Shown: piece after piece, positions 5,266-9,068 of the stretch | Position numbering within the stretch: position 1 is the first letter of the stretch | Layout: each line of letters starts with the position of its first letter | Assembly: GCA_033442325.1 (NCBI GenBank) | Contig: JAWQFM010000003.1 | Location: 607,552-642,440 of the forward strand | Direction of reading: 5' to 3' | DNA: 34,889 nt | Source: Salpingoeca rosetta | Lineage: Eukaryota; Protista; Choanoflagellata | Made by a program: the position numbers and the translations under genes | The notes under the pieces: generated by a model | What the model was told of the DNA's origin: nothing | Seen by the model: the letters and a program-made list of their open reading frames with translations, nothing else | Databases searched by the model: none

Positions 5266-8200
5266 TTAACAACGTGTTTCCTCATTTCCTGCATTACCAT
5301 TGTGGTGTGCAGAGCCAACCGCATCCAACGCAGCGTGTTGTTGTTGTTGTTGTTGTTGTTGTTGTTGTAGTTGTTGTTGTTGTTGTTGTTGCTGTTGTTG
5401 TTGTTGTTGTTGTTGTTGTTGCTGTTGTTGTTGTTGTTGCTGTTGTTGTTGTTGTTGCTGTTGTTGTTGTTGTTGCTGTTGTTGTTGCTGTTGTTGTTGT
5501 TTGTCATTGGGCTGCTGATCGTCATGTGCTCGCGTCACACCAACAACTTCAATCCCACCGCCATAATCGTAGCCGTCCTCATCCCCATCCCCATCGTCAT
5601 CGTCATCGACACTCGTGCCGTCACCGCCAGCAAGTGCAGGCATCCTGTGTACACGTCCGCGTTGGCGCACATCCCTCGACTGCCGATCGCCCACGCCCGA
5701 CGACGATAGCGACGACGGCGCCATATCCGCCACGTTCAGGGCGCGGCCACCACCAGCTGTGTCGTTGTTGCTGCTGTTGGTGTTGTTGTTGTCGTCGTTG
5801 CGGTTGGTGTTGGTCGTGCCCGTATCCATGGCGGATGGGGAGCGGGACAGCAGCAGCAGAGCGCTCCCGTCAATGCTGTGCGAGCGCGAATGGCGGCGTG
5901 GGGTCGTCCGTTTCCTGTCCACAATGCACACACACACACATGGAGGGTGAGGGAAGTGTATATGTGCGTCTGTGCGTTTGTGCGCGTCCGTGTGTGTGTG
6001 TGTGTGTGTGTGTGTGTGTGTGTGTGTGTGTGTGTGTGTGTGTGTGTGTGTGTGTGTGTGTGCGTGTGTGTCTGTGTGTGTCTGTGTGCGTGTGCGTATT
6101 GGATGCAGGGGGCAGAAGGCAGCAGCAATTTGGCACGTCTTACCTCTGCAAGAAGTACATTCAGCATGACAGTGCATCCACAACAGAGCATCCTTCCTCG
6201 AACCACCTCATGTGTGTTTGCATCTCACCCGCCGTAAAAACGACACGTGTCACGGCTTAGCTCCAAATCGGTGATTTTCACCAGCGCGCCCTGTCGACGC
6301 CTGGGTTTTGAGGCGCAGCCAGCACAGGTGAGGGGAGACGGGGACGGGATGAACATGCGCAATGTGCAACGCACACGTGCCTGAAATCGTTGTGCAACAG
6401 CACCACACATACACACATACATACATACACATACACACACATGCACATACATACACACACACACAAATACAATCACACACAGAACACTCCCTACGTGTTG
6501 ACACCTGATGATGTAGCGACGCAGCTCCTTCACCTCCCGTACGAGGTGCGGATATGACGCCAGCTGCTGCCGCCGCGTGCTCACGACCGTGCGTAGGTGT
6601 GCTGGCTCAAGCTGCAGCAGGCCAGGGTTGTGGGGGCCCGTTCCCCACCCGCACGTGCCCGCGCGGCGAAAATCCGGAACGAAGTCGTCCAACCCTGAGG
6701 CGATGCATGGGAGGGGATGCGTGAGCGGTGAGCGGGGACGTGTTGTAGTTGACGTGTCGTATCGAGTGCACATGGGAGAGAACCGCGAGAGGGAGTTGCG
6801 ACATGGATGCGTGTGTGAGCACGCATGACCAAGCTCAAGTGTATGTGAGGTACAGAGAAACAGAGAGAGGGAGACAGACAGACAGACAGACAAAAAACCA
6901 CACAAACAACCAAACACACGCACACGCACAGAGGGACCGAGAGAGACGAGCAGCCGCAGCAAAGCGTGGTGGCGTGCGACCTGCTCACCCATTGTTTTGA
7001 GCCACAGCAGCACATCGCGGTTTGTCCACTTGCTGACGCTCTCCTGGCACACGAGGAAGTTGCAGCTCTTGATGTCGCAATGCACAAGGCCTGCATGGGC
7101 ATGTTGCGTGTGTTGGGAAAGGGAGGGTGTTGAAAATGGGGCACAGATGACAAAAACAAACACACACACAGCCACACACACACACACACACACACACACA
7201 CACACACACACACACACACACACACACACACACACACACACACACACACACACACACACACACACATACACACACACGGACACACACACGGACACACATG
7301 TGCACACAGACGATTACCAAGGCGATGAAGGCAGGCGACGCTGCGACAGCAGTCGATGGCCATGTTGAGGCGCACGTCCCAGTCGGCAAGCTGCTTATCC
7401 CGCCGCTGCATCCCAAACAGCTCAAGCAGATTGCCTACGCAAACACACGCACACATACACACATGTAAACAGCCGCAGACAGCCGCAGGCAGCCGCAGGC
7501 AGCCGTAGGCAGATGTGAAAGAGTGAATTCTTGCATGTGTGTATGAACGGAGGAGTGATCGCTTGCAGTTGAAGTCACCATCCATCATCACCATCATCAT
7601 CACCACCATCACCACCATCACCACCGTCACCATCACCACCACCATCACCACGACCTTCCACCACCCATCACCACCACCTGGCCAAAGACACCAAACCTGA
7701 GCAGAGTTCCATGACGGAGGCAATTGCCGGTGGAGCGACGCACACGCCCTCGCCTTGCACGACATTTGGGTGGCGAATGGTGCACAGGAGGCTGTTTTCC
7801 AGGCAGAAGTTGCGAATGGTGTCCTTCTCCAGCTGTATGCAATACAGCATCTTGATTGCAACGTCCTTGCCCTCGTACACGCCACGGTACACGCGGCCCG
7901 TTCCGCCCGCGCCCAGCAGCCGCCGCTTCAGCACCTCCTCTGGCGCAATGTTGTCTTCCAGCTTCTGGAACTTGAGGTTTGCCATGTCGATCATTGGGCA
8001 CATGTCCCCAACCACGTCCATGTATCTGCCGAGCGCACTTGCGGCAACATCGTCCAGCTGGTCGCCTTGCATCATGGGCAGCAGCGGGCACTCCTCGTCA
8101 TCCTCATCACCGCCACCGCCACCACCACCTCCTCCTTTTCCCGTGGCAAGCGACTCGCGGCTACTGCTGGTGGCCCTTGTGCTGCCCCGGAGCGTGCTCT

Positions 8201-9068
8201 GCCGAGTGGCAAAGGACCCGACCCAGTACCGCTGGTCGCGCTGCAGGGTGAAGTAGATGAGGCCAGGCTTGACGGCGTTCCACGCGAAGGTGGTGATGGC
8301 GCCGTAGAGGCAGAAGCCGGCGTCGACGTTGAGGTACATGAGGACGAGAGTGGTCATGTAGATGGGCCTGTAGATGCACCAGCACCCGGCGTAGAGAATG
8401 GCCGCCGGACGCCGGTACAGGACACGATACGGCGCAAAGAGTACGATGAGGTACATGACAAGGAGCAAGCCCTCCGTGGACAGCTGCACGGCGAGGCCGT
8501 AGTCGAGGTCGTGGTGGGGTGCCCAGTGGGATGCGAGCAAGGCCAGCGTGGTGCCGACGCCGTAGACAAAGCCGACGACCGCGGAGACGATGGCAGCGTT
8601 GCGCAAGCTGCGTATGCCGGACCCGCGAAAGCAAAGGAAGATGAGGATGCCGTCCACGACGGTGTGGTAGATCCAGTTGGCCACGCCCCAATACACGGCC
8701 TCCTCGATGGCGTAGTCGGCGATGAACGGGCGGGTGTTGAAGTACAGGTTTCCGCCCAGGAAGAAGGCGATTGTGAGCCCAAACGCCCACATGATGCGCA
8801 TGTAGGCCGGAAACATGGTGAGGTTGCCCGTCACCGGCAGGCCTTTGACGGCCTTGATCTTCTTCAAGTACTGATACAGCATGATGAAGGCAAACCCGAG
8901 AAGCTGGAACATGCCGATGCCGAGCAAGAACCAGTCCACCTTTCCTCTGCGGCCGAACACGAGCGTTTTGCATGTTCCGTTCTTGGGCAGCTCCAGCTGC
9001 GCACCCAGCAGCTGGCCATGCAGACCGTCATGCGGTGGCTGCTGGTCTGCGAAGCCAACGTCCATCAT
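5266..9068 (-). CDS. 7-transmembrane receptor-like / TKL-type kinase fusion with an intra-kinase SAM domain and an acidic/polyQ tail (~833 aa); kinase C-lobe apparently missing
   Basis: Exons 9068-7697, 7434-7318, 7090-6989, 6694-6505, 6300-6229, 5914-5266, phases consistent. A probable 5'UTR intron lies at ~9101-9424. Seven hydrophobic segments end in KPGLIYFTLQRDQRYW. Kinase motifs: LGAGGTGRVYRG, VAIK, HPNVV, MELC, HCDIKSCNFLV, VKITDLELS. SAM-like segment: VSKWTNRDVLLWLKTMGLDDFVPDF...LLQLEPAHL...HLVREVKELR. The last exon is the least certain. Confidence 0.85.
5338..5502 (-). repeat. (CAA/CAG)n trinucleotide tract encoding ~55 Gln in the predicted last exon of the 7TM-kinase
   Basis: (GTT)n with GCT interruptions on the + strand. 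It is in frame as polyQ (one Leu interruption) in ORF 5266..6183. Confidence 0.85.

What the first reader, a model, noticed from the sequence alone, without database searches (positions are those of the whole stretch)
7697..9068. Single-polypeptide 7TM receptor plus TKL-type kinase (GPCR-kinase fusion)
Seen: one 1.37-kb exon encodes a short N-terminus and seven hydrophobic helices (WFLLGIG..; FPAYMRIMW..; AVYWGVANW..; NAAIVSAVV..; YGLAVQL..; AAILYAGCW..; AGFCLYGAI..PGLIYFTL), then QRDQRYW, a Ser/Gly/acidic linker and the kinase N-lobe. The kinase is non-RD (HCD), has the Ser/Thr-type Lys (DIKSCN), and has DLE in place of DFG. Recalled knowledge: 7TM-TKL fusions are reported in oomycetes, amoebozoans and some unicellular holozoans but not in animals, and TM7 resembles the TPRA1/GPR175 type. 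Inference: with the SAM insert and missing C-lobe, this is a candidate self-contained, G-protein-independent sensing module and the best novel-system candidate in the window.
Basis: partly seen in the sequence, partly recalled or inferred. Interest (0 to 1): 0.8.

Follow-up and report, generated by a model that had tools for sequence, protein, structure and literature searches.

The report
Seven-helix receptor fused to TKL kinase
A gene of the choanoflagellate Salpingoeca rosetta really does encode a seven-helix membrane receptor joined to a protein kinase; it belongs to a conserved, uncharacterised family, and its apparently "missing" kinase half is most likely a gap in the genome assembly.

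Summary
Minus-strand exon 9068-7697 encodes seven transmembrane helices (AlphaFold2 pLDDT 90), a linker and the N-lobe of a TKL-type kinase. The window is Salpingoeca rosetta, and the gene is XP_004996765, annotated "TKL protein kinase" (618 aa).

The membrane domain defines a family: 193 cluster representatives match it, and all 56 long ones scanned carry a kinase. Named members come from six craspedid choanoflagellates, Capsaspora and chrysophyte algae. D[L/F]E in place of DFG is frequent across the family while the catalytic Lys, Glu, His-x-Asp and Asn are conserved, so this is probably an active kinase. The membrane domain is a generic 7TM bundle. Its nearest family is TPRA1/GPR175, but below Pfam's threshold. 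G-protein coupling is untested.

The "missing C-lobe" is not supported. RNA-seq reads use a splice donor that overlaps the last annotated sense codon, just before the stop, and continue into sequence absent from the window. The C. flexa cDNA homologue and a closer relative's genomic locus both have a full C-lobe.

7TM-kinase fusions are already known from Dictyostelium, oomycetes, ciliates, acanthoecids and sponges. This is a new variant: craspedid and filasterean, with a TPRA1-like 7TM and a SAM domain inside the kinase. It lies in a genetically tractable model organism. Another agent of this scan already examined the SAM insert of this gene.

The parts
7697..9068 (-). Exon 1 (start codon 9068-9066). 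It encodes the short outer N-terminus, the 7TM domain, the linker, a juxtamembrane helix and the kinase N-lobe (residues 1-457).
   Evidence: RNA depth is continuous over 7706-9041.
8217..8972 (-). 7TM domain, residues 33-284. Conserved features are Cys33 and Cys253, R219-R220-P-A, P268...Y272 in TM7, and D278xxxW282xG284 after TM7.
   Evidence: AlphaFold2 pLDDT 90 with seven helices. Family conservation. There are 193 homologous representatives.
7974..8090 (-). Conserved juxtamembrane segment (about residues 327-365, PLLPMMQGDQLDDVAASALGRYMD...), placed before the kinase N-lobe.
   Evidence: Family consensus PLLG..SA..LA...D. It is helical in the C. flexa model (model residues 26-42, pLDDT 76-94).
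7697..7943 (-). Kinase N-lobe: G-loop GAGGTGRV, VAIK Lys406 and alpha-C Glu424.
   Evidence: Pfam PF07714/PF00069. Residue conservation is 54 of 56.
7318..7434 (-). Exon 2: hinge, alpha-D and alpha-E of the kinase.
   Evidence: Gene model equals the annotated protein. Splice joint 7318|7090 is seen in RNA. The exon 1-2 joint was not listed, but a relative's locus has an intron at the same place (MELC.G|NLLE), and the C. flexa cDNA reads straight across that point (MELCRGNLFELL).
6989..7090 (-). Exon 3: catalytic loop HCDIKSCNFLV and the start of the SAM-like insert.
   Evidence: Splice joints 7090|7318 and 6989|6694 are seen in RNA.
6505..6694 (-). Exon 4: the remainder of the SAM-like insert.
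   Evidence: SAM_2 is sub-threshold here (16.7 bits). It is above the cut-off at the same position in homologues P0014 and P0016. The C. flexa model shows about five helices there, with mean pLDDT mostly 95-97 (one block of ten residues at 90).
6229..6300 (-). Exon 5: beta-8, D605-L-E607 (the DFG equivalent) and the start of the activation segment. It ends at the donor GG|GT (6229|6228).
   Evidence: Joint 6300|6505 is seen in RNA. A loose end at 6228 (14 reads in 2 runs) shows that the donor is used.
6225..6227 (-). The annotated stop codon TGA of XP_004996765. RNA evidence places it inside an intron, so the 618-aa model is truncated.
5915..6228 (-). Interval that should hold the C-lobe exons but holds only intron-like sequence and a (CA)n run (5978-6103). 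It is probably a collapsed or missing stretch of the assembly.
   Evidence: No C-lobe coding sequence occurs anywhere in the window (tblastn). RNA continuations on both sides are absent from the window. A relative's locus, L002, has exons 6-8 immediately after exon 5.
5266..5914 (-). Low-complexity Asn/Asp/poly-Gln tail exon, transcribed from the minus strand. It is probably the last exon of the same gene, but the link is not shown.
   Evidence: Minus-strand RNA depth and a loose end at 5916 joining to an absent upstream exon. The frame is compatible. No Pfam domain matches.

Best explanation
This is a real, expressed gene of Salpingoeca rosetta for a receptor-like kinase. It has a short outer N-terminus, a seven-helix membrane domain, a conserved juxtamembrane helix, and a cytosolic TKL (MAP3K-like) Ser/Thr kinase. 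The kinase carries a SAM domain inserted between the catalytic loop and a D-L-E motif that stands where DFG normally is.

The gene belongs to a conserved 7TM-kinase family found in craspedid choanoflagellates, Capsaspora and chrysophyte algae.

Shown here: the architecture, transcription, family membership, conservation of the catalytic residues, and the fact that the annotated protein is cut short at a splice donor.

Inferred: the kinase is complete and active, with its C-lobe exons lost from the assembly. A signal sensed by the 7TM bundle is passed through the TM7 extension and the juxtamembrane helix to the kinase. The SAM insert promotes clustering and trans-activation. The output is direct phosphorylation, perhaps a MAPK-type cascade, without an obligatory G protein.
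For: Identity: 100% match to the S. rosetta 'TKL protein kinase' XP_004996765 / F2U1Q9.

7TM: AlphaFold2 pLDDT 90, pTM 0.85, seven helices, with a positive-inside charge bias of 6.7 against 1.6.

Family: 193 representatives match at E<=1e-3, and 56 of 56 long ones carry a kinase. Named members are C. flexa, H. balthica, M. brevicollis, S. infusionum, S. helianthica and Capsaspora CAOG_04937. Ochromonas danica and Ochromonadaceae CCMP2298 are also named.

Kinase type: the best solved relatives are MLK1, TNNI3K, CTR1, Roco4, DLK and TAK1.

Catalytic residues: K406 54/56, E424 54/56, H500 52/56, D502 50/56, K504 50/56 and N507 50/56. D[L/F]E recurs in the choanoflagellate, Capsaspora and chrysophyte branches.

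Transcription: splice joints 7090|7318, 6694|6989 and 6300|6505 are seen, and the RNA is from the minus strand.

Truncation artefact: 14 reads from two runs continue from 6229 into a sequence with no match in the window. The C. flexa cDNA protein has TAPEV, DVYSCG and HPDPDQRP. Locus L002 has the same exon structure plus C-lobe exons directly downstream.

Model of the C. flexa cytosolic part: pLDDT 88.9, pTM 0.88, with a full kinase, a five-helix insert and a juxtamembrane helix.

SAM: above the Pfam cut-off in P0014 and P0016 at the insert position.
Against: The S. rosetta C-lobe sequence itself was not recovered; only 30 letters of its continuation were seen.

The exon 1-2 splice joint was not listed by the read tool, because depth was low and the intron is repeat-rich.

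The tail exon's link to this gene is inferred.

Glu in place of the DFG Gly is unusual, and activity has never been assayed in any member.

No ligand, localisation or partner is known.

The fold search gives no specific receptor class: the list is flat, with Z about 12 for rhodopsins and about 11 for GPCRs, and Foldseek finds nothing at E<=1e-3.

Coupling between the 7TM domain and the kinase is pure inference.
Confidence: 0.7

Rival explanations
1. On this reading the S. rosetta copy truly ends after DLE, lacks the C-lobe, and acts as a 7TM scaffold with a SAM domain and half a kinase.
For: The NCBI model stops at TGA 6225-6227. No C-lobe coding sequence exists anywhere in the 34.9-kb window. 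HCD and DLE depart from the canonical motifs.
Against: The donor at 6229 is used, and reads continue into other sequence. The C. flexa cDNA homologue and a closer relative's genomic locus have a complete C-lobe. The N-lobe and catalytic loop are 90-100% conserved with close relatives, which is not what a decaying gene looks like. D[L/F]E is shared with homologues from other branches of the family.
Confidence: 0.08
2. It is a canonical G-protein-coupled receptor whose kinase tunes it. On this reading the 7TM domain activates heterotrimeric G proteins, and the fused kinase phosphorylates the receptor or its neighbours for arrestin-type desensitisation. This is one of the models proposed for oomycete GPCR-TKLs.
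For: The model is proposed in PMC6033456 and PMC5784254. The fold has the GPCR-like seven-helix topology. One of the 56 long relatives scanned carries a DEP domain.
Against: There is no match to any GPCR Pfam family. There is no E/DRY motif, and no NPxxY: the sequence is [K/E/Q]PxxxY instead. The structural match to GPCRs is no better than the match to microbial rhodopsins. No coupling data exist for any member.
Confidence: 0.12
3. The 7TM domain is only a membrane anchor or organelle address. Like TPRA1-like or GPR137-like proteins of endomembranes, it would place a constitutively regulated MAP3K-like kinase on a compartment and sense nothing itself.
For: The nearest families by features are orphan or organellar 7TM proteins: TPRA1, GPR137, TOM1/THH1 and Chs7. 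The outer loops and N-terminus are very short, which leaves little room for a ligand site outside the bundle.
Against: There is strong family-wide conservation inside the bundle and at its cytosolic face: R219 and R220 in 56/56, P268 in 53/56, D278 and W282 in 54-55/56, and the Cys33/Cys253 pair. That is more than an anchor needs. The juxtamembrane helix is also conserved.
Confidence: 0.1

Closest known systems
GPCR-TKL 'bigrams' of oomycetes and 7TMK1/7TMK2 of Dictyostelium (PMC5784254, PMC6033456, PMC1420674)
   Same: An N-terminal seven-helix domain and a C-terminal TKL-type kinase lie on one polypeptide, and none has been characterised functionally. [quoted passage not shown] The family reaches stramenopiles (chrysophytes).
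   Different: Direct homology to named oomycete or Dictyostelium sequences was not tested, because none was on hand. Those papers report the architecture only from oomycetes and amoebozoans. The choanoflagellate branch adds a SAM domain inside the kinase core.
Acanthoecid GPCR-TKL/K and choanoflagellate/sponge GPCR-TK (eLife 2025, PMC12716839)
   Same: These are choanoflagellate 7TM-kinase fusions, and the kinase is TKL-like in the first group.
   Different: That paper states that GPCR-TKL/K occurs only in acanthoecids and that its 7TM clusters with no other eukaryotic GPCR. The present family is craspedid and filasterean, and its 7TM has clear relatives in chrysophytes. The kinase is not a tyrosine kinase (DIKSCN loop), so it is not a GPCR-TK. 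The paper's text assigns no 7TM-TKL to craspedids. I could not check whether this protein is among its 23 S. rosetta GPCRs or its 76 unclustered ones, because the supplements are not held.
TPRA1 / GPR175 (Pfam PF10160, Tmemb_40)
   Same: It is the best look-alike of the 7TM domain by language-model features (0.91-0.93, with 186-189 shared features). It is also the best by predicted structure (TM 0.62-0.67 over 241-255 residues). It is the only Pfam family hit by more than two relatives (4 of 69, best E 0.0014).
   Different: It is below Pfam's threshold in every member, and S. rosetta gives no hit at E<=10. TPRA1 has no kinase. No profile-profile test could be run.
MAP3K-type TKL kinases (MLK1/MLK4, DLK, TAK1, CTR1), TNNI3K and Roco4
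   Same: They are the nearest solved kinase domains by sequence (E 1e-28 to 1e-20). By fold, the highest-ranked TKL match is CTR1 at TM 0.86 by target.
   Different: They are soluble kinases with a canonical DFG, and none has a domain inserted between the catalytic loop and DFG.

Membership tests
7TM-kinase fusion (GPCR-TKL architecture) | Seven transmembrane helices N-terminal of the catalytic domain | tested here: met
   AlphaFold2 with 69 homologues gives seven helices, pLDDT 90. Hydropathy agrees.
7TM-kinase fusion (GPCR-TKL architecture) | TKL-type protein kinase on the same polypeptide and transcript | tested here: met
   The same exon encodes TM7 and the N-lobe. Pfam matches. The nearest solved kinases are all TKL. 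The C. flexa cDNA ORF carries both parts.
7TM-kinase fusion (GPCR-TKL architecture) | N-terminus outside and kinase cytosolic | tested here: inconclusive
   In silico only. K+R is 6.7 in the odd loops against 1.6 in the even loops. The Cys33/Cys253 pair is conserved on the putative outer face. No experiment was done, and DeepTMHMM was not available.
7TM-kinase fusion (GPCR-TKL architecture) | 7TM homologous to that of named oomycete, Dictyostelium or acanthoecid members | not testable with these tools
   No named sequence of those groups was retrievable. Homologues were found in chrysophytes and Capsaspora.
G-protein-coupled receptor in the strict sense | Match to a GPCR family profile, or class motifs (E/DRY, NPxxY) | tested here: not met
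   No 7tm_1, 7tm_2, 7tm_3, Dicty_CAR or Frizzled hit appears in S. rosetta or among the 25 families listed for the 69 relatives. TM3 ends in CFRGSG. TM7 has [K/E/Q]PxxxY.
G-protein-coupled receptor in the strict sense | Coupling to heterotrimeric G proteins | not testable with these tools
   This needs biochemistry.
TPRA1/GPR175 (PF10160) | Pfam gathering score (25 bits) | tested here: not met
   S. rosetta gives no hit at E<=10. Among relatives the best is E 0.0014, in 4 of 69. P0101 scores 12.5 bits.
TPRA1/GPR175 (PF10160) | Shared fold beyond the generic 7TM bundle | tested here: inconclusive
   It is the top Atlas match in both searches (TM 0.62-0.67), but rhodopsins and ceramidase-like folds follow at 0.50-0.54.
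Microbial rhodopsin | Conserved retinal-binding Lys in TM7 | tested here: not met
   Position 267 is K in 18, E in 14 and Q in 9 of 56. Structural Z of about 12 is no better than for GPCRs.
Catalytically competent protein kinase | VAIK Lys, alpha-C Glu, HxD Asp, catalytic Asn and the metal-binding Asp of DFG | tested here: met
   K406, E424, D502, N507 and D605 are present, and the first four are conserved in 50-54 of 56. DFG reads DLE, and D[L/F]E recurs in several branches of the family.
Catalytically competent protein kinase | Complete C-lobe (APE, alpha-F to alpha-I) | tested here: inconclusive
   It is absent from the window, but the transcript continues beyond exon 5, and the C. flexa cDNA homologue and a relative's genomic locus have it.
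SAM domain (insert) | Pfam SAM_1/SAM_2 above cut-off, with a five-helix bundle | tested here: inconclusive
   In S. rosetta it scores 13.8-16.7 bits against a cut-off of 20.5. Homologues P0014 and P0016 score 24.9-26.7 bits at the same position. The C. flexa model shows about five helices with mean pLDDT mostly 95-97.

The most novel reading that the evidence does not exclude
The 7TM-TKL receptor kinase is one ancient, vertically inherited unit rather than a set of repeated convergent fusions. The unit comprises the membrane bundle, the juxtamembrane helix and a kinase with D[L/F]E, and it is shared by holozoans and stramenopiles. Animal TPRA1/GPR175 would be its kinase-less remnant. In choanoflagellates it would work as a G-protein-independent, ligand-gated, MAP3K-like receptor that clusters through a SAM domain built into the kinase core.
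Probability: 0.2. Interest if true: 0.75.

Novelty: new variant of a known kind. Interest (0 to 1): 0.55.

Why it matters
No 7TM-kinase fusion of any organism has been characterised functionally, as the 2025 eLife catalogue states. The same paper reports TKL-type fusions only from acanthoecids, which are not genetically tractable, and reads them as a convergent invention.

Here the same kind of protein is found in S. rosetta, the choanoflagellate with working CRISPR and transfection. It has orthologues in at least five other craspedids and in Capsaspora, and clear relatives in chrysophytes. That makes the question "does a seven-helix receptor drive a fused kinase directly?" testable in a close relative of animals. 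It also argues that this fusion is old rather than repeatedly reinvented.

There is a practical point as well. The reference model XP_004996765 is truncated at a splice donor, and the assembly probably lacks about 1 kb of the gene. Kinome and GPCR surveys based on it will misclassify the protein.

Tried and rejected
1. Foldseek against the PDB with the 7TM model gave nothing at E<=1e-3. VIA-align against 48,161 chains gave a flat list (Z 12.3 to 10.2) mixing microbial rhodopsins and class A GPCRs, so no class could be assigned.

2. A profile of the 7TM alignment against PDB sequences gave no hit at E<=10.

3. The retinal-protein reading was rejected, because the TM7 Lys is not conserved.

4. 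Searching the window for the two RNA continuations found nothing. tblastn with C-lobes of four homologues found only chance matches. The missing exons therefore could not be recovered, and read laying allowed only one call.

5. A word-index search with the full-length family profile was swamped by generic kinases and added nothing.

6. I tried to name the organism of GCA_006365155.1 / VFQN01 through the paper library and found no paper. The clade was instead placed in chrysophytes through named relatives.

7. The hunt for the single DEP-bearing relative was negative in the 27 relatives looked at one by one.

8. The supplements of the eLife catalogue are not held. I could not check whether this protein is in its lists, nor compare it with acanthoecid sequences.

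9. P0101 was tried as a bridge to TPRA1, but it proved to be an exon fragment of the same family.

The read-laying run used 5,001 letters.
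Full report
**What is there.** The stretch 7697-9068 is the first coding exon of a minus-strand gene in a eukaryotic window (GC about 55%, introns full of CA/GT microsatellites). It translates without a stop into 457 residues. A word-index search found a 100% match to 'TKL protein kinase [Salpingoeca rosetta]' (618 aa; EGD81561.1, XP_004996765.1, UniProt F2U1Q9). 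The organism is therefore the craspedid choanoflagellate S. rosetta. My hand-built exons are 9068-7697, 7434-7318, 7090-6989, 6694-6505 and 6300-6229. They reproduce the annotated protein.

**The seven helices.**
- An AlphaFold2 model of residues 1-295, built on 69 homologues, has mean pLDDT 90.0 and pTM 0.85.
- Its seven long helices are 46-74, 87-109, 121-145, 152-182, 188-211, 221-245 and 249-283.
- Hydropathy peaks agree.
- Across 69 sequences the odd loops carry 6.7 Lys+Arg on average and the even loops 1.6.
- Cys33 in the N-terminal stretch and Cys253 at the top of TM7 are nearly invariant.

These features fit an N-terminus outside, a possible outer disulfide (inferred), and a cytosolic kinase.

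**The kinase.**
- Pfam finds PF07714/PF00069 over residues 382-517 of the annotated protein, E about 1e-17.
- The full-length Choanoeca flexa homologue P0008 matches MLK1, TNNI3K, CTR1, MLK4, Roco4, DLK and TAK1 best among solved structures (E 4.5e-28 to about 4e-20).
- Its model superposes on kinase domains at TM about 0.8-0.88 by target. The highest-ranked TKL matches are CTR1 (0.86), Roco4 and TNNI3K. 'TKL-type' therefore holds.
- In 56 long relatives, K406, E424, H500, D502, K504 and N507 are conserved in 50-54.
- The residue after the catalytic His varies (R, L, C, M, K), so most members are non-RD.
- D-L-E in place of DFG is not a private lesion. D[L/F]E-[L/W] recurs through the family: choanoflagellates mostly have TDLEL, Capsaspora SDFELS and chrysophytes SDLELG. 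A few members differ (DFE, DVS, DLG).
- With every other catalytic residue under constraint, an active kinase with an atypical metal-binding motif is more likely than a pseudokinase. No member has been assayed.

**A family, not a one-off.**
- phmmer of the 7TM part alone against 1.84 billion representatives gave 193 hits at E<=1e-3. Of these, 47 were at 1e-10 and 10 at 1e-30.
- All 56 long hits scanned carry a protein kinase domain.
- Named members are C. flexa, Hartaetosiga balthica, Monosiga brevicollis, S. infusionum, S. helianthica and Capsaspora owczarzaki CAOG_04937.
- A large sister group proved to be chrysophyte: Ochromonas danica, Ochromonadaceae CCMP2298 and an MMETSP Ochromonas.
- Some chrysophyte members carry a C-terminal PAS_9 domain. 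One relative carries DEP.
- The relatives share the bundle motifs: RRPA after TM5, P...Y in TM7, and D...W.G after TM7.
- They also share a juxtamembrane segment (PLLG..SA..LA...D) that is helical in the model, and the D[L/F]E motif.

This argues that the whole architecture is inherited as a unit. A FastTree of the 7TM parts puts the choanoflagellate sequences in one well-supported clade (99). Capsaspora and the chrysophyte group fall outside it.

**What kind of 7TM.**
- No GPCR Pfam family matches S. rosetta, and none is among the 25 families listed for the 69 relatives.
- Foldseek against the PDB gives nothing at E<=1e-3.
- The exhaustive structural search gives a flat list in which microbial rhodopsins (Z about 12) and class A GPCRs (Z about 11) are tied.
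- The TM7 Lys is not conserved, so the domain is not a retinal protein.
- The only recurrent specific lead is TPRA1/GPR175 (PF10160).
  - It gives the best ESM Atlas feature hits (0.91-0.93).
  - It is the best Atlas structural match in two searches (TM 0.62-0.67).
  - It gives sub-threshold Pfam hits in 4 of 69 relatives.

I read this as a probable distant relationship. It is not membership. 'GPCR' is a topological label here, and G-protein coupling is untested.

**The 'missing C-lobe' is most likely an assembly and annotation artefact.** The annotated protein ends ...TCRFYGG followed by TGA (6225-6227).
- Stranded RNA-seq of the same species confirms joints 7090|7318, 6694|6989 and 6300|6505 (runs X21-X23; one call of 5,001 letters).
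- It also shows 14 reads in two runs that run from 6229 into a perfectly agreeing sequence that does not lie on the stretch.
- That sequence has no match within two mismatches anywhere in the window. So GG|GTGAGA is a used splice donor and the TGA is intronic.
- Likewise, the low-complexity exon beginning near 5914 is joined from an upstream exon that is absent from the window.
- Only 314 bases lie between the two points, largely a (CA)n run.
- tblastn with four homologous C-lobes finds nothing in the whole window.
- In contrast, the C. flexa cDNA protein continues with TAPEV, DVYSCG and HPDPDQRP.
- A genomic contig of a closer relative (L002, 51% identity overall in the tblastn alignment, 57% by BLASTP over exon 1) has the same five exons. 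They are followed directly by exons encoding TPNWTAPEL...DIYSLSMVLWEIL...RPAIPPDTDEAY...AWH and ...KRPTAGEIL....

The simplest reading is that about 1 kb with the C-lobe exons was lost or collapsed in the reference assembly. I could not recover the sequence itself.

**The SAM insert.** In S. rosetta the match to SAM_2 is sub-threshold. Homologues P0014 and P0016 pass Pfam's cut-off at the same position, directly after the catalytic loop. The C. flexa model shows about five confident helices there. The insert is confined to the choanoflagellate clade. Another agent of this scan reached the same view of the insert (s1-434362).

**How it probably works.**
- Shown: a polytopic seven-helix domain is covalently joined to a MAP3K-like TKL kinase, it is transcribed, and it is under family-wide constraint.
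- Inferred:
  - A conformational change of the bundle is passed through the long TM7 helix and the conserved juxtamembrane helix to the N-lobe.
  - The SAM insert favours clustering and trans-activation.
  - The output is direct phosphorylation.
- Rivals:
  - a real truncated pseudokinase (0.08);
  - a conventional G-protein-coupled receptor with a self-regulating kinase (0.12);
  - a 7TM domain that merely anchors the kinase (0.10).

**Comparison with the literature.** Seven-helix kinases were described in:
- Dictyostelium, as 7TMK1/2 (PMC1420674);
- oomycetes, as GPCR-TKL (PMC5784254, PMC6033456);
- ciliates and amoebae (PMC10463195);
- acanthoecid choanoflagellates and sponges (PMC12716839).

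The last paper states that the TKL-type family is acanthoecid-only, that its 7TM clusters with nothing else, and that the fusion arose convergently. Its text assigns no such protein to craspedids. The present family is craspedid and filasterean, with chrysophyte relatives, a TPRA1-like bundle and a SAM-in-kinase insert. It is therefore a new variant of a known kind rather than a new kind. I could not check the paper's supplementary lists.

**Verdict.** Interest is moderate, at 0.55. The kind is known, but this copy lies in a tractable model organism. It also widens the family's reported range and argues against convergent origin.

Noticed in passing
window 5915-6228 (minus strand), with the (CA)n run at 5978-6103: The reference assembly appears to lack the kinase C-lobe exons. 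RNA reads leave exon 5 at 6229 and enter the tail exon near 5914 through sequences that occur nowhere in the 34.9-kb window. The public model XP_004996765 therefore ends at an intronic TGA.
   Followed up: partly
window 5266-5914 (minus strand): This is a low-complexity exon (Asn/Asp-rich, then about 70 Gln encoded by CAA/CAG) transcribed from the minus strand. Read depth there is inflated and variant letters appear at 5771-5793. These most likely come from reads of similar repeats elsewhere, not from editing.
   Followed up: no
window 2532-2885 (plus strand), with the gene running to about 5100: Its product has an ATP-grasp_2 domain (PF08442, E 8.5e-38), which looks like the beta subunit of succinyl-CoA ligase. 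The plus-strand transcript ending near 5100 is strongly expressed (depth up to about 100-160).
   Followed up: partly
Family alignments A2 and A4 (S. rosetta residues 327-365 and 605-607): Two signatures recur in the family that I did not find described: a conserved juxtamembrane helix PLLG..SA..LA...D before the kinase, and D[L/F]E in place of DFG.
   Followed up: partly
L001 (NCBI GCA_006365155.1, contig VFQN01002603.1) and relatives P0207-P0269: Chrysophyte algae hold a large expansion of the same 7TM-kinase family: dozens of clusters, at least one gene (L001) intronless, and some with a C-terminal PAS_9 domain. The papers read here report such fusions in stramenopiles only from oomycetes.
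   Followed up: partly
window 9543-9700 and upstream (plus strand): There is a well-expressed plus-strand transcript (depth 45-65) just upstream of the receptor-kinase gene. Many molecules end at 9530-9535, which probably marks the boundary of a neighbouring, divergently transcribed gene.
   Followed up: no
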